From Mytilus californianus (Eukaryota): a stretch of 64,000 nt of DNA. The position numbers and the translations under genes are program-made. Below, piece by piece: positions 8,153 to 17,689 of this stretch; position 1 is the stretch's first letter; every line of letters begins with the position of its first letter. The stretch spans positions 54,746,001-54,810,000 of the forward strand of contig NW_026262581.1 of assembly GCF_021869535.1 (NCBI RefSeq), read 5' to 3'. The notes under the pieces are model-generated. The model made no database searches. It saw nothing but the letters and a program-made list of their open reading frames with translations, and was not told where the DNA came from.

Positions 8153-9939
8153 AGGGGTCATCAGGCCCCAAACTAGACAAAGTTTTGAGAGTAATAAAAA
8201 AATCTGGATTTACCATAAATGTAGCTCCATAAGGGCCATAAAGGGGGGACCCAGGCACCCCACTCCTAAATCTGTCTCTGATATTAAACATTGTTTATAT
8301 GTTTCTGAATATTTTATAAAAAGACTTGAAAGATTATGTTAGAAAACATTTTTATAATGATATTTCGAATAACATTTAAATGTTTTTTTAATGATTTTTT
8401 GAGAATATGAAGATTATTAAAACATTTTGTTGAAAAATATTTTTTGAACTCTTTCAAAACATTTTATCCTGCAGAAATGAATTTTTATATGTTTTAAAAA
8501 TGTTTCAGGGATATTTGATTAACAAGCACATTCAAATCATTTATAAGACATTTTACAAACATTGTCGTCAAAATTCAGTAACATTTTAATGATGTTTTAA
8601 AAGTATCATGAAAATGTTTTGAAAATATTTTTAACGCCATACATTTGTGCATGATTTTGATATTTTTCTACAATATTTTTTCAACATTTTTCTATTTTTT
8701 TTGGTGCTAACTGGGAAAGCAGTGGTGAAACAGCACCACATTAGAACAAATAATAAAATCAATTGCATGTAAATCCATTTCATCTTTTATGCATAATTTA
8801 TTTACAATGTATTTTTATGAAATTAGAAAGAACACAGCAAACACAGATAATTCTGGAACCAAGTTGAATTAGAAGTTTCCACGTGGAATTACATGTTTCA
8901 GATTGTTTATTCCCCTGCCACAGCAGAGGAGAGGCATTAAGTTTTACCCTTGTGTAACTTTTAGACAATACAAGGACTCTTTTAATGTGAATTCGGTTGG
9001 ACAACACTTTTCTATCACAAACTACTTTCTTCTGATCTAGTTGGAATTTCCCTTTCAGAAAAGTTTGTGTGTTAATATAAGGAACTGTCTTGACTAGTAA
9101 ATAAATCCTGTTCCATAATTCCACTATTTGCCATTTGTTGTCACCTTTGTCAAATTTTTTTTTACATCTGGTTCTGACAGAAGTATTGATCCTCGCACTT
9201 GCAGCCACTTGGATTTTAACCATGAATTCATTTCAAACATAAAGATGTATCCCATTCATCACTTCATGGTTGGGTAAAAAGTCTGTTATCCATGATGGCT
9301 TCTGAAATATTAAAACAGGAAAACACAAAGCATCATGTTATTTAATAAACTGCAGGTTCAGAAATTTTTCTTATCATTCATAAAGGACAAGCGTTTAATG
9401 CAGGGATGTGTGTGATGTTTTTTTCTAAAAAAAAATACTCTTGATTTCCAACTTTGAAGAATTAAAAAAAAAATGTTCTGACAGCTTTTGCCATAAGTTT
9501 AATGTAAAGTCCTTAGAAAATTCAGACTTTATTGCGACAAACAAATAGAAAAATTATGCTCATATGTACCATGGTTTTTTTTTAGAATGCAATATAGGGA
9601 TTGTCATATTTCCCAATACATGTAGTTCTCTTCCTTTCATGCATTGTTTTGTCAGGGAAATATATTTCACTTGCTATAATTAAGTGCACAACATAATTAT
9701 TATTTCTTATTTACAATGCAAACAAACGTAAAAGGGTGAAAAAATGTGAAGACTAGGAAAAAACTTACAAAGTGTGAGGGTATATTTGAAGAATAAAATA
9801 CATCCCTGTGTCATCCCCCTATTTTAATAAATAATAACCTGTCAAATTATTGGGCTGTTTAATCGAGAAAAAATAAAACAAAGAGGTTAAATACTGTACT
9901 AAATATAAGAAAAATATAAATACATAATAACCTAATCCT

Positions 9940-10145
9940 GTTGTTATATAATCTCCTGGCATGACATGGTTATCAGCTGGTTATGGCAAACTTGGTCGAA
10001 TATTTTCCGCCGGGTTTCCCTAGATATTTTTGAATGGTGGATCAACTCTCTTGATGCCTTTTCTCCATTTTAAAAGAATTTCATGGTCTTTTGGGAATCT
10101 GTGGTCCCCCTTCAGAATAATTGCAGCCGGGGATACAACAATTTT
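9940..10145 (-). pseudogene. Frameshifted THAP zinc-finger exon (transposase-type N-terminus)
   Basis: Minus-strand translation gives QNCCIPGCNYSEGG / HRFPKDHEILLKWRKGIKRVDPPFKNI / KPG / DQVCHN. This matches the THAP C2CH signature (CxxxxC, HxFP, W, P, VCxxH). Confidence 0.7.
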
Positions 10146-10886
10146 GGAGCTTAGTTTGGTGAAATTAGCGAGTGTCGATTGTGGTTACTAATGTAAACAT
10201 GTGCAACGTAATGCGATTCAAGCGTCAAATTGATTAAAACGTTTCCGACAACCGCTTATGGAACACCAGCGACGTCTACAGGAAGAAATATTACGAATGA
10301 TCCCTATTGGAAAAAAACTTAAAAGAAGCTTATTGGAAATTGAAAGTAAACTTAAAATTTCTTTAAAAAAAAACCTTCATCACACTTTTACAAAAATAAG
10401 GAAATTAAGTATGATTGCCAATGAGACAACTTTCCACCAAAGTTGCATGTTACTTCCCGAATTAAGTACTTTAATTCGTATCGTACTATTTATATAATGA
10501 AGATTCCCAATTTCAATTTTAGCGTGATCGGCAAATTTGAGTAACGTGCCATTGTACATTTATTCTGATCGTACGAGTATACATATGTAAATAAGTTATT
10601 GTGTATTTATTTGTGTTATAATTTAAAGATATGTATTTTTAACATGTTGTTTATTATACAAGTATACGATTGCGTTCCAGTAAACGAAAGTGAGACAAAA
10701 TAGACACTCTTTGTTGTGAAAACCCATGCAAAGCCGTTCGGACCCATTGTGATTTATTGAGAATTTGTTCACAACAATTGGTGATAGCGTTGGCATGTTG
10801 TGTAACTTTTCAAAGTAGTTTTCAGCTTTTGGGTTTGCTATCATCGCTCACAAAGTTCTTGGAACGTTCAAACATCTTTAACCCTC

Positions 10887-10950
10887 TTACTGCGGGAAGG
10901 ACATTAATGTGTCCTCCCCTGGCTTACTGCGGGAAGGACATATATGTCCT
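10887..10950. repeat. piggyBac left subterminal direct repeats containing palindromes
   Basis: ttactgcgggaaggacat occurs twice (from 10887 and 10924). aggacatatatgtcct (10935-10950) is a perfect 16-bp palindrome, and aggacattaatgtgtcct (10898-10915) is an imperfect copy. Confidence 0.8.
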
Positions 10951-11084
10951 TTGTGTATGCAAATACGGCTGTTTTTCATAGCATGTGCTAAACTATACCC
11001 CTCCCTCCTTTATTGCATAGATTATAAATATTAGAATTATTAGAATATTTGTTTTTTTTTTATTCTTCTTTTTCTTAAAACGTC

Positions 11085-11122
11085 ATGATTACGTCATAAC
11101 TTATATGACGTCATAAGACGTC
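11085..11122. promoter_or_regulatory. Cluster of CRE-like (TGACGTCA) motifs upstream of the transposase ATG
   Basis: Perfect palindrome tatgacgtcata at 11104-11115, flanked by ttacgtca and agacgtcg, ~50-80 bp upstream of ATG 11164. Function is inferred only. Confidence 0.35.
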
Positions 11123-11163
11123 GCAATCGAGTTGACGGTAAAATAGAGCTAAAAAATTTAGCA

Positions 11164-11786
11164 ATGAGCGATTTTGAATCCGAAATGTCCGAAATTGATA
11201 CAGATACAGATTCAGATTTAGAGAATGAAACGTTGAATCCTGGTCCATGGTTTCCAGTATTAAACACTGAAGAGTTTTATATGCCAGAAATGCAGGAATT
11301 TCGTGGAAATCGTTTTGGACCAGTAGACATTCGGCCGGATGATAAACCACATGAAATATTCCTATCCATGTTGACGGACCTAGAAAATGTAGAGAACAAT
11401 GTGGTGGGCGTTCTTGTAAAAGAAACAAACAGATACGCTGAACATCGGATATCAATGGGAAATCTGAAACCACGATCAAGGCTTCATATGTGGCGTCCAG
11501 TCTGTAATGAAGAAATGAAAGCTTTCCTCGGACTCTTGTTGCTAATGGAAATAATTCAGAAGCCAACATTAGCTTCGTATTGGGAAACTCAGGACAAGTT
11601 GTGGTTGAGAAGAACTCCTTCCTTCCGTTCTGTGATGGCAAGGGACAGATTTTTAGCCATTCTGTCTAATCTACACGCAAATAATAACCAGACAGCACTG
11701 CCAAGGGATCATCCACAATATGACCCAATGTACAAAGTTAGACCAGTTATTGATGTATGCAACACAGCATTTAGGAAGAATTACAG
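11164..11786 (+). CDS. piggyBac transposase exon 1
   Basis: Acidic N-terminus, then LVKETNRYA, EEMKAFLGLLLLM, YW, MARDRFLAILSNLH and KVRPVID. Ends at phase-2 donor AG|GTACAG. Confidence 0.88.
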
Positions 11787-12150
11787 GTACAGCATTAATG
11801 TTTCTTTAATATGATCTAATTTACATCCGATGAAAAAGTACGTTTATAAATTTCCAGTGGCAAATATTACATACACACCCGGACAAAAGTCGATTGCAAA
11901 AGATTAACATAAATAGTTACTTTTCGCATCGCTTTTTCACGCACGTGCAATATATCTATCTATTTTTGTCAAATACGCGTGTAAATCATGTATATTTTAA
12001 AAAATACCATCCTCTTTTCTTTGCTGTTTTTTAAAGTTTATAATTAATTAGACCACGACATGTAACTTTATTGAACTATGTAATTCAAAATACTAAAAAA
12101 AGTCGATTGAAAAATATAGTGATTTTTATTAGAAATATTTTCTCCGTCAG

Positions 12151-12636
12151 GTTAGGAAGAGATATTTGTGTAGATGAACGAATAGTAGGATTTAAAGGTA
12201 GACATAATATCGTCCAATACATTTCAAAGAAAAAATCTCATCAGTGGGGAGCCAAGGTATGGGTTCTTAGTGAATCTGATACAGGATATACTGAGCACGT
12301 ACAGTTATACTATGGAAGACGTAACCGTCAGCAGCCATATCCTCATGGAGTTGGCTATTCAGTTGTAACAGAGTTAATAGAGCCTCACTATAATAAATTT
12401 CATCATGTAACAACAGACAGTCTCTTTACCAGTCCAAAACTCACTCACGACTTACTTGGTAATGGCACTTACTCGACCGGAACAGTCATAGCAGGCAGAA
12501 AGGGAATGCCATTGAGTTTCAAAACCTTAAAAACCCCTGAAGGAACGGTCAATGCTAAGAAGCAGGGAAATGTACTGGCAATTCATTGGTCTGATCGTCG
12601 ACAGGTGCGATTTCTTACATCGTCTGATCATTGCAG
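12151..12636 (+). CDS. piggyBac transposase exon 2 (first two catalytic Asp)
   Basis: Acceptor ttttctccgtcag|G in matching phase. Reads LGRDICVDERIVGFKGR...QYISKK...WGAKVW and VTTDSLFTS. Donor CAG|GTTTGT. Confidence 0.9.
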
Positions 12637-12872
12637 GTTTGTTATGTTCATTTAAGCTATGTTTAGATAGGCTGCCTAAGAACCTTTGAATTCATAATTG
12701 AAGTTTTAATAACTTTGTAATTTGATGTATAGAGTGTTCAGAAAATACCAATGGTAATAGTAATAAGAATAATATTAATGATAAAAGTAATAGTAATAAA
12801 AGAAATAGTAAACAACAACAACAACAACAATAACAATAATGATAATTGATGATGATAGTTATAAATTAAAAT

Positions 12873-14802
12873 AAAATGCTCCGCAGGGCGCAGCTTGATA
12901 CGACCGCAGAGGTCGAACCCTGAACAGTTGGGTCAAGTATGGACACAACATTCAAGCTTGATACAGCTCTGAATTTGGATTGTGATTAAATATTTGACAC
13001 AGCATAGGTTTCTGACACAGAATGAATGTGGTCTAAGAACTTAAAAATTTTAAATTGGACATTCACCTATTATGGTCCAATATCCAAAATCTATACATGG
13101 TTAGATTCAGCATATCAAAGAACCCCAAGAGTTCAATTTTTGATGAAATCAAACAAAAGTTTAATTTTGGACCCTTTTGACCTCAATGTGGACAAAGTTG
13201 ATAACGGGGCCCAAAAATCAAAAATCTAAATACATGATTAGATTCAGCATATCAAAGAACCCTATATATTCAATTTTTGTTGAAAACAAACAAAGTTTAA
13301 TTTTGGACCCCGATTTGGACCAACTTGAAAACTGGGCCCATAATCAAAAATCTAAATACATGGTTAGATTCAGCATATCAAAGAACCCTAAAAATTCAAT
13401 TTTTGTTAAAATCAAACTAAGTTTAATTTTGGACCCTTTGGACATTAATGTAGACCAATTTGAAAACGGAACCAAAAATTAAGAATCTAAATACACGGTT
13501 AGATTCCGCATATCAAAGGACCCCAATAATTCAATTTTTGAAGAAATCAAACAAAGTTAAATTTTGGACCCTTTGGACCTCAATGTGGACCAATTTAAAA
13601 ACGGGGCCCAAAATCCAAAAACTTAATACACAGTTAGATTCAGCATATTAAAGAACCCCAAGAATTCAAGAATAAAACCCCATTGAAATTGATCAAGAAA
13701 TAAGCAATTTATACGAAGTATCTTCTTTTGCACAATACTGTGCAATTGAATATTTCTTGCTATTGCGCAATACTGTACAATTGACAATTTCTTGCTATTG
13801 CGCAATATTGTGCTATTGGATATTTCTTGCTATTGCGCAATACTGTGCAATTGAACATTTCTTGCTATTGCGCAATACTGTGCAATTGAACATTTCTTGC
13901 TATTGTGCAATACTGTGCAATTGAAAATTTCTTGCTATTGCACAATACTTATTATATAATAATTTACACATCCTGTTTGGTGTGTATCTCCTACCATATC
14001 ATTATTATTTGCTTTTAAATATAAATCAGAAATAACCAACTTAAAATGGAAAATTTTAAAAGAAAAAAAAAGGAAAAAAACAAAAAAAACAACAAAAAAA
14101 ACAAAAAAAAAAACCCAAATTTTTTGAACCCCCTTATGATTCATCATCCCCAAACTCAATCCCAGCCTTCCCTTTGTGATATGGTACCTTGCAGTACAAT
14201 TTCAGAGAGATCCATACACTTGAACACAAGTTATTGTCTGGAAACTAGAAAAATGCTTATTTTTGGCCCCAATTCCTAAACGTTTCGGGCAATTACCCCC
14301 AAACTCAATTCCAGCTTTCCCTTTGTGATATGGAACCTTGTAGTACAATTTCAGAAATATCCAAACACTTACACACAAGTTATTGTCATGAAACTGGAAA
14401 AATGCTTGTTTTTTGCGCCTTTTTTGGCCCCTAATTCCTAAAATTTTGAGGCAATTACCCCCAAAATCAATTACAGCCTTCCCTTTGTGATATGGAACCT
14501 TGTGGTACAATGTCAGAGAGATCCATATACTTACACACAAGTTATTGTCTGGAAGTTACAAAAATGCTTATTTTTGGCCATTAATTCCTTAACTGTTGGT
14601 ACCATAACCCCCAAAATCAATCCCAACCTTCCTTTCGTGGTATAGAACCTTATGGTAAAATTTCATGGAGATCCATTCACTTAAACAAAAGTTCGAGTGC
14701 GAAAACCAATGTGTCTTCGGACGACGCCGGACGACGACGACGACGCCAACGTCATACCAATATACGACCAAAAAAATTTTAATTTTTGCGGTCGTATAAA
14801 AA
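12873..14802 (+). mobile_element. HINE nested in piggyBac intron 2, carrying three different tandem arrays
   Basis: Subterminal inverted repeats atacgaccgc (~12899) and gcggtcgtat (14788-14797), with 3' stem-loop tatacgacc...ggtcgtata. Arrays: ~135 bp x4+ (13085-13660), 35 bp x6 (13733-13945), ~150 bp x4 (14149-14700). Confidence 0.7.
13733..13945. repeat. 35-bp minisatellite, ~6 units
   Basis: Unit caatactgtgcaattgaa(t/c)atttcttgctattgcg. A single copy also occurs at ~6562-6597. Confidence 0.9.
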
Positions 14803-14962
14803 TTAAAACGAAGATAATTTATGATGATAACAATAAATAAAGAAAAATAAAAATGGTGATGATGACGATTTTCTGTTGTAGCATATACAGGCAAATCTGA
14901 AATATGAAAGTAAAGTTATAGTCTATCATGAATCTGATTTGATAAGTTATTTTTATTGCAAG

Positions 14963-15143
14963 GTTGGAAACTGCTTCAAATTCTAAGGGAAAGGAAAAAG
15001 TCGCTCCGGGAGTTGTCCATACTTACAATGAAAACATGGGGGAGTAGATTTAGGAGATCAACTTATCTCAGTTTATGATCCAGACATACATTCAGTGAAA
15101 CTGTGGAAACAGATTCTTGTTAATCTTTTATTGACTGCTTGTG
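14963..15143 (+). CDS. piggyBac transposase exon 3 (third catalytic Asp; 1-nt deletion in a G run)
   Basis: Not in the ORF track. Acceptor tttttattgcaag|G. Reads (R)LETASNSKGKEKVAPGVVHTYNENMG[G]VDLGDQLISVYDPDIHSVKLWKQILVNLLLTAC once one G is restored at 15038-15042. Donor G|GTTAGT is phase 1. Confidence 0.85.
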
Positions 15144-15645
15144 GTTAGTATTTTAGTTATTTATAATACAATTATTTTTTCAATAATAAAATGTGCCATC
15201 TAACAAGAAAAAAACGAATGGCAATTATTTATTGTTCATATATATATACGTATACAAAGTGATTCAGATAACCAATCGTCAATGAATTTACGACTACCTA
15301 CTGCATCTGCTCAAATGATCATTGCGGTAGAATACCAACGTCCGTCTTATTAGCAAACATTTCAACAAACATGCATATGCTATTTTATCCTGCAATCGAC
15401 CTTTCCATTATTCTAATACAGGTGTACAGACAACACGAAGCGATATACGTATACTAGAACTATATAGTCTCCTGCTTCTGTTGCGAGCGAACGGTTATGT
15501 CAAATTACTGTTTACGTCACAGTTCAATTTAGGGTCCTCATTCCGGTCCACGTTTAAGTCATGTCGATTTCTTTCAAAAAAAAATTCAACGATTGGGATG
15601 GGAAAAAAAATGAACAAAATTAATTGCAGGATAAAGACAATAACG

Positions 15646-15769
15646 GTTTAGTGTCTTTAAATATCAGCTGTATTTATACTCGGCTCGAAACAGGAGTAAT
15701 AGCTCGCTTAAGCATTACACCTCTTTCTTAGCCTCGCACAAATACAGCTGATATTTAAAGACACTAAAC
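15646..15769. repeat. Hairpin element in piggyBac intron 3
   Basis: The 30-bp arm gtttagtgtctttaaatatcagctgtattt has its exact reverse complement at ~15740-15769, with a decayed, partly pairing loop between them. Confidence 0.85.
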
Positions 15770-15864
15770 AGTTAATGTTTATACATTCGTTATCCTTATC
15801 ATTAAAGTAGTATCTTAATTAGCTGAGTTCAGGATGCCAAAAATATAACGTAACTGTATAATAT

Positions 15865-16185
15865 AAAAAATAAGGAGCTGTGTTATGATTGCCAAAGAGA
15901 CAACCATCCACAAAAGTTCAAATGAAGTGGATGTACTAAGCAATCATAGACAATCTTAATTCCTTCAACAATAAGAAAAACCCATACCGTAAGGTCGGCT
16001 GTAAAAGGCCCCGACAAGAAAATATGAAATAATTCAATTGAGAAAACTGTCGGCCTAATTTATAACAAAACAGTTTACGAAAAACAAATATGAAAAACAT
16101 GAACCAACGACAACCACTGAACTACAGACTCCTGATTTGAGCAGGCACAGGAAGAATGTGGCAGGTTTAAACATGTTTAAGAGCG
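15865..16185 (+). repeat. Abundant interspersed repeat (…gtatgattgccaatgagacaac… family) in intron 3
   Basis: Homologous to 7385-7510 (minus), 10405-10440, 60535-60825 and 61295-61590 (minus). Confidence 0.7.
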
Positions 16186-16402
16186 CTTTTTATGATATAA
16201 AAAATTGACAACTAAGATACATTTCATGTACGAACTACAATATTGTTATTGCTCATAAAGTCCAAATGTCGCTGCACGACAGTCACACAATGACGTAATC
16301 ACTGAAACGATTTTGGACGAAACTTAATGATGTAAAATATTTCCAAAGAATTCAAAACTATTATTTAGCTATATATATATATTATACTATTCCTGCTTAC
16401 AG

Positions 16403-16725
16403 TGAATGCATATATTTGCCACAAGAGATCATTCCTTTTGGGGAAAAAGTTAACCCATCTCCAGTTTCAACAGGAAATTGTGACTGGCTTAGTTGGGGAG
16501 CATAACATTCAAAGTCGAGTTTTGGGTAGGAATGGAGAAGAAATGGCTCGTAGAGCAACATCAGAACATTTCCTGTTTGAAATCCCTCGAAGAAAGAGGA
16601 GGAATTGTGTTTCCTGCCATAAACGGAAGGTTAGAACTTGGTGCCAACAGTGCAGAGAAGGTCTCTGTCTAGGAAAGTGTTTCAAGGACTATCACAAACA
16701 CAAGCAACGTCAACACGAAGAGTAA
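16403..16725 (+). CDS. piggyBac transposase exon 4 with C-terminal cysteine-rich domain
   Basis: Acceptor ttcctgcttacag|TG completes the V of LLTAC-V-NAYI. Ends with CVSC...TWCQQCREGLCLGKCFKDYH and TAA. AATAAA at 16868-16873. Confidence 0.9.
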
Positions 16726-17689
16726 AATAACTTGTGAAATTCATTAACTACTGTGTTGTTTGCTGTATTACTAGATGTATATATACGATGTGTTACGATT
16801 GGTGATGTGAACTATCATTGAACCGAATTAAAAATTTGGAAAAATGTATGTTTTTTTCTGTTGACCAAATAAAGATACAGCGACATGCCCCCATCTTAAA
16901 ATCATGACATAAGAAAGATAAATTGTATAGGGTTCAAATAGTTCTTTTAACGCTTTCGTAAGTGAACAGAATACGTTTCTTGTGGTTGCATTATGTTCCG
17001 GAAAAAAAGTTCTATTTTTCTTCTTAGCATTGCAAAGTGCTTGACGTTATTTAATTGAAAAGCGCCAAACTTACTGAAGACGTAGCGTTCTTACCTTATG
17101 ACGTTAAATGATGTCATATTAGGAACGTTATTTTTAAAAAAATAAACGTGATTACTATATATCTTATTATGTCATTAATTATCCATTGAAAATACAAGAT
17201 TTTATAACAATTGACTTAAAATGTTATTTGATACTGAAATTGTGCCGTTTCTGGACAGTGTTTTGTAAAACGGACCGCACTAAGAGGGTTAAAACTTAAT
17301 TAAGCTGTTTTGACTTTTCATTTTGAGGTGGAGCGTCCCTAAATTTCGAGACTTTTTAATGCATATTTTGCTTTTGGTCTCTGCAGTGCATTTCCAGCTT
17401 ATCAAAACGTTTCAAAGCATTGTTTTGCTTTTGACTTTGTCCCTCTTTCCCTTTATTCACGCTAGTTTGATTTCAGAACTTTTTAGATTCTGGTTTTAAA
17501 ATTTCGTTTTGGTTGTCATCACGTTTCCATATTAAGTCTTTGGCGCAATTATTTCCAACTTTAATAGCTGATTTAGAAAAAAAAAGAAATTCGCTATTTA
17601 ATTCAATTATTTAAATCCTTTCAAGGCTGGTCAGCATTTAGGTTTAAATTTTCGTGAATAAGATTGAGTAAATCAAACTTCAATATCGA

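What the first reader, a model, noticed from the sequence alone, without database searches (positions are those of the whole stretch)
10882..17288. TIR-bounded piggyBac whose transposase is split by three phase-consistent spliceosomal introns
Seen: TTAA TSDs, a 13/14 TIR match, and four exons (11164-11786, 12151-12636, 14963-15143, 16403-16725). The GT-AG introns are 364, 2326 and 1259 bp in phases 2, 2 and 1. All three catalytic Asp motifs (VDE, TDSLFTS, GVD) and the Cys-rich C-terminus are present. Known: well-studied mobile piggyBacs have single-exon transposases, and introns are typical of domesticated, end-less derivatives such as PGBD5. Intact ends together with introns is therefore unusual.
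Basis: partly seen in the sequence, partly recalled or inferred. Interest (0 to 1): 0.75.

Follow-up and report, generated by a model that had tools for sequence, protein, structure and literature searches.

The report
Intron-bearing mussel piggyBac, one frameshift
This is a real piggyBac DNA transposon of a Mytilus-type mussel whose transposase gene carries three genuine introns that related mobile copies in mussels and an oyster share, but this copy is broken by a one-base frameshift.

Summary
The anatomy is confirmed. There are TTAA duplications, 13/14 CCC..GGG inverted ends, four exons and three GT-AG gaps at the stated coordinates.

The gaps are real introns, not junk:
- All six related copies fetched from M. 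coruscus, M. galloprovincialis and M. edulis keep the same splice sites. They lie at loci with different flanks, and where the ends were captured they show the same TTAA and ends.
- Two distant families (47-50% protein identity, one from an oyster) are also TIR/TTAA-bounded. Both share the second and third intron positions and phases around an invariant 182-nt exon; the mussel one shares the first as well.
- Ka/Ks in the spliced frame is 0.125, against 1.2-1.9 in wrong frames and 0.7-0.9 in introns.
- An RNA-seq contig joins exon 1 to exon 2 exactly.

'Phase-consistent' is wrong for the sequence as assembled. Exon 3 is 181 nt against 182 nt in intact relatives. The missing base lies in a G run just before the GVD aspartate, so the exons sum to 1613 nt. 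This copy is defective, or mis-assembled at a homopolymer.

Introns 2 and 3 are inflated by nested repeats. Relatives have introns of about 530, 360 and 890 nt.

An intact four-exon 545-aa copy exists in M. galloprovincialis.

Papers I could search describe mobile piggyBacs as intronless. I rate it a new variant of a known kind, of moderate interest. The scan noted similar elements elsewhere in this genome (unchecked).

The parts
10878..10881 (.). Left TTAA target-site duplication
10882..10895 (+). Left terminal inverted repeat CCCTCTTACTGCGG
   Evidence: (I14). It is identical in L001 and L003-L006.
10886..10947 (+). Two subterminal direct repeats, each holding a GGACAT..ATGTCC palindrome. 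Probably transposase-binding sites (inferred).
   Evidence: D10. The first ~80 nt are near-identical between subfamilies. A GACATnnnATGTC palindrome also sits beside the TIR of distant families L007 and L008.
11080..11113 (+). Four ACGTCA/TGACGT half-sites 50-80 nt upstream of the ATG. Candidate internal promoter elements (inferred).
   Evidence: RNA-library contig record 9 covers 11042-11184.
11164..11786 (+). [quoted passage not shown] It ends in phase 2.
11787..12150 (+). Intron 1, GT..AG, 364 nt (about 530-610 nt in the other copies)
   Evidence: RNA contig X19 record 12 joins 11783 to 12148, which equals 11786|12151 given the shared CAG. Conserved sites are shown. Database gene models read RKNYR|LGRDICVDE.
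12151..12636 (+). Exon 2: catalytic core with VDE (D268 equivalent) and TDSLFTS (D346 equivalent). It ends in phase 2.
12637..14962 (+). Intron 2, GT..AG, 2326 nt. It is 364 nt in the intact relative L003.
12870..14803 (.). Nested, hugely abundant non-autonomous repeat with three internal tandem arrays. It is a secondary insertion specific to this copy.
   Evidence: depth 4e5-1.4e6 against about 20; loose ends at 12870 and 14803; empty site in L005, L006 and L003
14963..15143 (+). Exon 3, 181 nt here and 182 nt in intact relatives. It carries YNENMG/GVD, the third catalytic Asp.
15038..15042 (+). G5 run where the reading frame breaks (one base short). It is the only frame-breaking lesion in the four exons.
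   Evidence: Relatives read GGGAGG (L001) and G7 (L002). P0005 reads YNENMGGVD.
15144..16402 (+). Intron 3, GT..AG, 1259 nt (888 nt in L003)
15389..15781 (.). 393-nt nested insertion with 54-nt inverted arms, found only in this copy
   Evidence: (I1)
16403..16725 (+). Exon 4: C-terminal region with the Cys-rich domain and the stop codon
16868..16873 (+). AATAAA, candidate polyadenylation signal (inferred)
   Evidence: RNA-library contig record 15 reaches 16787.
17275..17288 (-). Right terminal inverted repeat (CCCTCTTAGTGCGG on the minus strand)
   Evidence: The same C/G mismatch is seen in the other copies whose right end was captured (L002-L006).
17289..17292 (.). Right TTAA target-site duplication

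Best explanation
The stretch is one copy of a low-copy, recently mobile piggyBac family of Mytilus mussels whose transposase gene is normally built from four exons.

Shown:
- The element has piggyBac ends and TTAA duplications.
- Related copies lie at unrelated loci in three Mytilus species.
- All of them keep the three GT-AG introns.
- The spliced frame has evolved under strong purifying selection.
- Intron 1 is removed exactly in a contig from an RNA-seq library.

Inferred mechanism:
- Transcription starts from the 5' subterminal region.
- The host spliceosome removes three introns in phases 2, 2 and 1.
- The mRNA encodes a transposase of about 540 aa with a DDD catalytic core and a C-terminal Cys-rich domain.
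- The protein binds the asymmetric ends and cuts and pastes the whole DNA, introns included, between TTAA sites.

This copy cannot make that protein as assembled, because exon 3 is one base short in a G run just upstream of the third catalytic aspartate. With intact ends it could still be moved in trans by an intact copy. Since insertion it has also collected two nested repeats inside introns 2 and 3.
For: Ends and duplications.

Transposase identity:
- Pfam DDE_Tnp_1_7 on exons 1 and 2.
- PDB piggyBac 6x67 alignment of D268 and D346.
- The intact relative P0005 aligns to piggyBat 9c0f (E 7e-43) and piggyBac 6x67 (E 1e-27), including GGVD.

Other copies:
- L005 and L006 (M. coruscus) are about 91-96% identical to the window by BLASTN. 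L003 (M. galloprovincialis) and L004 (M. edulis) are about 82-89% identical.
- Each of these four has both ends, TTAA and different flanks.

Splicing:
- All three GT..AG pairs are kept in all 7 copies.
- L003 has exons of 641+486+182+329 = 1638 nt that thread exactly onto the 545-aa database protein P0005.
- L007 (M. galloprovincialis, 50% identity) has introns at all three positions and phases. L008 (Saccostrea echinata, 47%) shares the second and third. Both have an identical 182-nt exon, their own perfect TIRs and TTAA.
- RNA contig X19 record 12 (520 nt, 9 mismatches) skips exactly 364 nt. X19 depth is 4-6.5 on exons 1, 2 and 4 against 0.5 on intron 1.

Selection: window versus L003 gives Ks 0.355, Ka 0.044 and Ka/Ks 0.125. 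Wrong frames give 1.2-1.9 and introns 0.7-0.9.

Frameshift.
Against: - Removal of introns 2 and 3 in RNA was not seen. X19 has no depth on exon 3.
- Two raw RNA runs (about 6% of each sampled) gave no reads on any exon, so expression is at best very low in those samples.
- The spliced contig comes from a 'mollusc metagenome' RNA library that may hold some DNA.
- The frameshift lies in a homopolymer, and run length differs among assemblies (5, 6 with an A, 7). It may be an assembly error rather than a mutation.
- No transposition assay exists. Mobility is inferred from copies at different loci.
- Most sampled copies carry frame-breaking indels. Only L003 is intact.
Confidence: 0.85

Rival explanations
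1. The element is as described, but the exon-3 frameshift is a homopolymer error of the assembly. In that case this copy encodes a full transposase and is autonomous.
For: - The break is a single base in a G run.
- It is the only frame-breaking lesion in the four exons.
- G-run length is unstable across assemblies.
- A DNA contig of run X1 ends exactly at 15042, the end of the run, as happens at a branch point (record 6).
- Ka/Ks of the window against its nearest copy L005 is 0.20, so little neutral decay is visible.
Against: - No read-level evidence for an extra G was shown (table 4 lists nothing there, though rows were cut).
- Most other copies carry real-looking frameshifts elsewhere, so dead copies are the rule in this family.
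Confidence: 0.25
2. It is a domesticated host gene of the PGBD type that happens to keep transposon-like ends. The introns would then mark domestication.
For: - Strong purifying selection on the coding frame.
- Low copy number.
- Database names such as 'piggyBac transposable element-derived protein 4-like'.
Against: - Copies sit at loci with unrelated flanks within and between species, each with TTAA and both ends.
- Most copies are broken.
- The cis ends are more conserved than the UTRs and introns.
- Two further families show the same design with their own perfect TIRs.
Confidence: 0.03
3. The three gaps are not introns. They would be insertions or junk that split a dead single-exon transposase, with GT-AG ends by chance.
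For: Introns 2 and 3 of this copy are largely made of nested repeats.
Against: - After removing the nested repeats, gaps of about 360-890 nt remain at the same codon positions in every copy.
- The same positions and phases occur in families whose introns are not alignable.
- The frame is continuous only after removal of the gaps, and selection acts on that frame.
- An RNA-library contig lacks intron 1 exactly.
Confidence: 0.03

Closest known systems
Mobile piggyBac-like elements (T. ni piggyBac, bat piggyBat, Xenopus Uribo2)
   Same: - TTAA target duplication and short CCC..GGG terminal inverted repeats with asymmetric subterminal repeats.
- DDE_Tnp_1_7 core with the DDD aspartates and a C-terminal Cys-rich domain.
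- Best solved-structure matches are piggyBat (9c0f) and piggyBac (6x67).
   Different: Those elements encode the transposase in one uninterrupted ORF. Here the gene has three conserved spliceosomal introns, so transposase production depends on host splicing.
Domesticated intron-bearing piggyBac derivatives (PGBD5, ciliate PiggyMac and TPB2)
   Same: The transposase domain is split by spliceosomal introns at positions conserved between relatives (PMC3902484, PMC5381638).
   Different: Those are single-copy host genes without TIRs or TTAA duplications, and PGBD5 has lost most catalytic aspartates. Here the ends, the duplications, several copies at different loci and the catalytic motifs are all kept.
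TLEWI, Tc1-like elements with introns in pteriomorph bivalves (Puzakov et al. preprint, 10.1101/656579)
   Same: - The same host group (Pteriomorphia) and low copy number.
- 2-5 GT-AG introns at conserved positions in a DDE transposase.
- Identical exon-intron structure among copies is taken as evidence of transposition after intron gain.
   Different: It belongs to a different superfamily (Tc1/mariner). TLEWI lack terminal inverted repeats and are discussed as possibly co-opted, whereas these piggyBacs keep perfect functional-looking ends.
P element, Tol2 and Ac: DNA transposons whose transposase gene has introns (own knowledge)
   Same: They are cut-and-paste elements that carry introns along in DNA and need host splicing. 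In the P element, splicing of one intron limits activity to the germline.
   Different: They belong to other superfamilies. No tissue-specific splicing has been shown for the mussel element.

Membership tests
piggyBac superfamily, mobile element | TTAA target-site duplication | tested here: met
   TTAA lies at 10878-10881 and 17289-17292. It is also at both ends of L003-L008, apart from L002, whose right-hand copy reads TTCA.
piggyBac superfamily, mobile element | Short terminal inverted repeats starting CCC and ending GGG | tested here: met
   13/14 match, with 0 matches expected by chance. The same single C/G mismatch occurs in the other copies whose right end was captured, so it is a family trait.
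piggyBac superfamily, mobile element | Transposase with the DDE_Tnp_1_7 (PF13843) domain | tested here: met
   Exon 1 E 9e-26 and exon 2 E 1e-29, covering adjoining parts of the profile.
piggyBac superfamily, mobile element | Three catalytic aspartates (T. ni D268, D346, D447) in one reading frame | tested here: not met
   D268 and D346 equivalents are in frame in exon 2. The GVD aspartate is present but shifted out of frame in this copy. It is in frame in relative P0005.
piggyBac superfamily, mobile element | C-terminal cysteine-rich domain | tested here: inconclusive
   A C-x2-C...C-x2-C...C...C...H pattern is visible in exon 4. Pfam zf-Tnp_2 scores 18.8 bits, below the 24-bit cut-off.
piggyBac superfamily, mobile element | Copies at different genomic sites (evidence of transposition) | tested here: met
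   Six related copies in three Mytilus species have unrelated flanks.
piggyBac superfamily, mobile element | Excision and integration activity | not testable with these tools
   This needs a transposition assay.
Spliceosomal introns | GT..AG boundaries kept in relatives | tested here: met
   All three pairs are kept in all 7 copies and in L007 and L008.
Spliceosomal introns | Same position and phase in distant homologues | tested here: met
   Phases 2, 2 and 1 fall at the same alignment columns in L007. L008 shares the second and third positions, and its first junction is unclear because the gene model lacks most of exon 1. The 182-nt exon is invariant in all three families.
Spliceosomal introns | Removed from RNA | tested here: inconclusive
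   Intron 1 is removed exactly in one RNA-seq contig. Introns 2 and 3 were not observed either way. Two raw RNA runs had no reads on the exons.
Domesticated PGBD-type gene | Loss of TIRs and TSD, with a single syntenic locus | tested here: not met
   Ends and TTAA are present, and copies lie at non-homologous loci.

The most novel reading that the evidence does not exclude
A clade of still-mobile piggyBac transposons in pteriomorph bivalves (mussels and at least one oyster) has carried introns at fixed positions while keeping working ends. The second and third, in phases 2 and 1, bracket an invariant 182-nt exon in all three families. The first, in phase 2, is shared by both mussel families. 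These introns predate the split of families now only 47-50% identical in protein. Introns in a piggyBac transposase would then not be a mark of domestication. Intron-bearing mobile ancestors become a plausible source for genes such as PGBD5. Host splicing may gate transposase output, as it does for the P element.
Probability: 0.55. Interest if true: 0.6.

Novelty: new variant of a known kind. Interest (0 to 1): 0.5.

Why it matters
- Reviews of the piggyBac superfamily treat an uninterrupted ORF as the hallmark of mobile elements and introns as a feature of domesticated genes (PMC3902484, PMC5381638). A TIR-bounded, multi-locus family under purifying selection with conserved introns shows that the two features can coexist for a long time.
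- This bears on an open question raised for PGBD5: whether its introns existed before domestication.
- Surveys that look for single ORFs will miss or mis-size such elements.
- The naturally intact M. galloprovincialis copy (L003) is a candidate native transposon tool for bivalves. It also offers a way to test splicing-dependent control of a piggyBac.

Tried and rejected
- Programmed frameshift or transcriptional slippage at the G run: rejected. Intact relatives read straight through with one more base, and run length varies between copies.
- Gaps as nested insertions: rejected (see rivals).
- Direct RNA support for introns 2 and 3: not obtained. Two raw RNA runs gave zero reads on the exons and X19 has no depth on exon 3. 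A protein word search with the junction-spanning part of P0005 found only genomic gene models, no cDNA-derived ORFs.
- Exact look-up of the window's exon-1 ORF in public assemblies: not on record, so the window's species was not pinned down beyond Mytilus-like.
- PDB search with the 37-aa exon-3 piece: no hit.
- Flanking ORFs of 90 aa or more on both sides: no Pfam family.
- Literature: seven searches on piggyBac and introns found no description of intron-bearing, TIR-bounded bivalve piggyBacs. My recollection that a lepidopteran element (CsuPLE1.1) has an intron was not borne out by the paper I could read. Repbase could not be consulted, and from memory it may already list multi-exon piggyBac families.
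- The four exons of the window copy were never joined. All searches were exon by exon or used database proteins.


Full report
**1. Observation**

The sequence shows TTAA at 10878-10881 followed by CCCTCTTACTGCGG. At the other end the reverse complement CCCTCTTAGTGCGG is followed by TTAA at 17289-17292. The repeat finder reports this pair as 19 nt, 95% complementary (I14). A pattern search finds exactly these two sites in 64 kb, with none expected from shuffles.

- Exon 1 and exon 2 are open. They hit Pfam DDE_Tnp_1_7 at profile positions 2-122 and 125-279, so junction 1 is seamless.
- The aspartates of VDE and TDSLFTS align with D268 and D346 of the solved T. ni piggyBac transposase.
- Exon 4 is open to a stop and carries the Cys-rich tail, though the Pfam zinc-finger match is below its cut-off.

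Exon 3 is the exception. The frame inherited from exon 2 reads LETASNSKGKEKVAPGVVHTYNENMGE and then stops. GGVDLGDQLISVYDPD...LLTAC lies in a different frame. The exons sum to 1613 nt, so as assembled the phases are 2, 2, 0. The third catalytic aspartate is out of frame. 'Phase-consistent' is therefore not correct. Another first-stage note (s1-335435) made the same point, and I verified it independently.

**2. What the gaps are**

A word search with exon 1 found annotated Mytilus proteins. A second search with one of them (P0001) found a 545-aa M. galloprovincialis protein, P0005. It reads straight across all three junctions: RKNYR|LGRDICVDE, SSDHCR|LETASNS, LLTAC|VNAYICH. It also contains YNENMGGVD.

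I fetched the encoding loci.
- L003 (M. galloprovincialis), L004 (M. edulis), L005 and L006 (M. coruscus) are complete elements of about 4.2-5.0 kb.
- Each has TTAA on both sides, the same left and right ends (including the same C/G mismatch) and flanks unrelated to each other or to the window.
- L001 is cut by a contig end, and L002 is a degenerate copy.

A seven-way alignment shows GT and AG kept at all three introns in all copies. Threading P0005 onto L003 gives exons of 641, 486, 182 and 329 nt (1638 nt) and introns of 532, 364 and 888 nt in phases 2, 2 and 1.

The window's large introns have a simple cause:
- 12870-14803 is absent from every other copy, and L005, L006 and L003 show the empty site.
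- 15389-15781 is also absent from every other copy.
- Read depth confirms that these stretches are very abundant repeats. Depth is 4e5-1.4e6 for the intron-2 repeat against about 20 on the exons.

**3. Are they introns in the functional sense?**

Four lines of evidence agree.

(a) Selection. Between the window (subfamily A) and L003 (subfamily B), Ks is 0.355 and Ka 0.044, so Ka/Ks is 0.125 over 532 whole codons. I counted exon by exon and skipped split codons. The two wrong frames give 1.2 and 1.9, and intron pseudo-frames give 0.7-0.9.

(b) Deep conservation. Two further elements are each bounded by TTAA and their own perfect TIRs.
- They are L007 from M. galloprovincialis (P0008, 50% identity) and L008 from the oyster Saccostrea echinata (P0011, 47% identity).
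- L007 has introns at all three alignment columns and phases. L008 shares the second and third, and the exon between them is 182 nt in all three families.
- Each also has one further intron at a non-matching place. The first junction of L008 is unclear because the gene model lacks most of exon 1.

(c) RNA. In an RNA-seq library labelled mollusc metagenome (X19), a 520-nt contig maps 11568-11783 and then 12148-12451. It skips exactly 364 nt. Given the shared CAG, that is the junction 11786|12151. Depth is 4-6.5 on exons 1, 2 and 4 and 0.5 on intron 1.

(d) Cis conservation. The first ~80 nt of the left end, with a duplicated unit holding a GGACAT..ATGTCC palindrome, are nearly identical between subfamilies, while the 3' UTR is about 80% identical. 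A similar palindrome sits beside the TIR in L007 and L008.

Limits:
- Exon 3 has no depth in X19.
- Two raw RNA runs, sampled at about 6%, gave no reads on the exons.
- Removal of introns 2 and 3 is therefore inferred, not observed.

**4. State of this copy**

Relative to L003, the window has in-frame differences (-15 and -3 nt in exon 1, -6 in exon 4) and one frame-breaking shortfall of a single base at the G run 15038-15042. Relatives read GGGAGG (L001) or seven G (L002) there. The lesion is therefore specific to this copy.

The site is a homopolymer, and a DNA contig of run X1 stops exactly at its end. I cannot exclude an assembly error, and I give that about one chance in four.

Other copies carry their own frameshifts. 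Only L003 is intact. L003 and L004 lie at different loci in different species and differ by Ks 0.012, which points to recent movement. DNA contig depth on the exons (16-31 summed, 7-11 per contig) indicates a low copy number.

**5. Mechanism**

Shown: piggyBac ends, TTAA duplications, copies at independent loci, conserved splice sites, coding constraint in the spliced frame, and one exact junction in RNA.

Inferred:
- Transcription starts in the 5' subterminal region. Four ACGTCA/TGACGT half-sites lie at 11080-11113, and an RNA-library contig begins at 11042.
- The host spliceosome removes three introns.
- The mRNA encodes a DDD transposase of about 540 aa.
- The protein binds the asymmetric ends and cuts and pastes the whole DNA between TTAA sites.

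Because the DNA itself moves, introns travel with the element. This copy is non-autonomous as assembled but has intact ends.

**6. Comparison with what is known**

The protein is closest to piggyBat and piggyBac among solved structures. The literature says the following.
- Pavelitz et al. 2013 state that, apart from ciliate piggyMacs, piggyBac transposase domains other than PGBD5 are single uninterrupted ORFs (PMC3902484).
- Bouallegue et al. 2017 list introns only for domesticated members (PMC5381638).
- A 2023 mining study reports single ORFs, including for mollusc genomes (PMC10813416).
- The nearest parallel is TLEWI, intron-bearing Tc1-like elements of the same bivalve subclass. These lack TIRs (10.1101/656579).

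I found no paper describing this architecture for bivalve piggyBacs. I could not consult Repbase, where multi-exon piggyBac entries may exist (own recollection, unverified).

**7. Verdict**

The structure is real and the introns are real. This copy is broken or mis-assembled at one base. The interesting point is not this locus but the lineage: mobile piggyBacs with anciently conserved introns.

I class it as a new variant of a known kind, with interest 0.5. The scan's own notes list further intron-bearing piggyBacs elsewhere in this genome (s1-328185, s1-314024). I did not check them.

Noticed in passing
window 12870-14803: A 1.93-kb nested element lies in intron 2.
- It has three internal tandem arrays: 135/261 nt x4.5, 35 nt x6.6 and 162 nt x3.6.
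- It has a 3' hairpin at 14761-14798.
- It is extremely abundant in DNA contigs (depth about 4e5-1.4e6) and heavily represented in RNA libraries.
- Its architecture resembles tandem-repeat-bearing non-autonomous elements of bivalves (pearl / MgE / Helentron-derived HINEs; PMC7492417). Sequence identity to MgE was not tested.
   Followed up: partly
window 15389-15781: A 393-nt insertion in intron 3 is present only in this copy. It carries 54-nt inverted arms (15632-15685 / 15730-15783) and is moderately repeated in the genome (depth about 2-6 thousand).
   Followed up: partly
window 15860-16259: A repeat inside intron 3 has depth 1.4-2.1e5. All family copies but L002 carry it, so it was already part of the transposon when it spread.
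   Followed up: partly
window 10886-10947; L007 4309-4345; L008 4713-4749: A palindrome of the form GACAT(n)ATGTC sits about 20 nt inside the left TIR. It is duplicated in the Mytilus family and recurs in two distant bivalve piggyBac families. It is a likely conserved transposase-binding site.
   Followed up: partly
L003 5706-9983 (M. galloprovincialis UYJE01005576.1): This is an apparently intact member of the family: both ends, TTAA, and four exons totalling 1638 nt that thread exactly onto the 545-aa protein P0005. It is a candidate active element.
   Followed up: partly
L005 about 9995-10576 and L006 about 9925-10683: The two M. coruscus copies share a different insertion of about 580-760 nt in intron 2, near the equivalent of window 14826-14839. 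It is unrelated to the window's nested element.
   Followed up: no
window 12860-14859, run X21: RNA reads on the nested repeat are strongly strand-biased in run X21 (about 40:1) but not in X22. This suggests directional transcription of that repeat family in some libraries or tissues.
   Followed up: no
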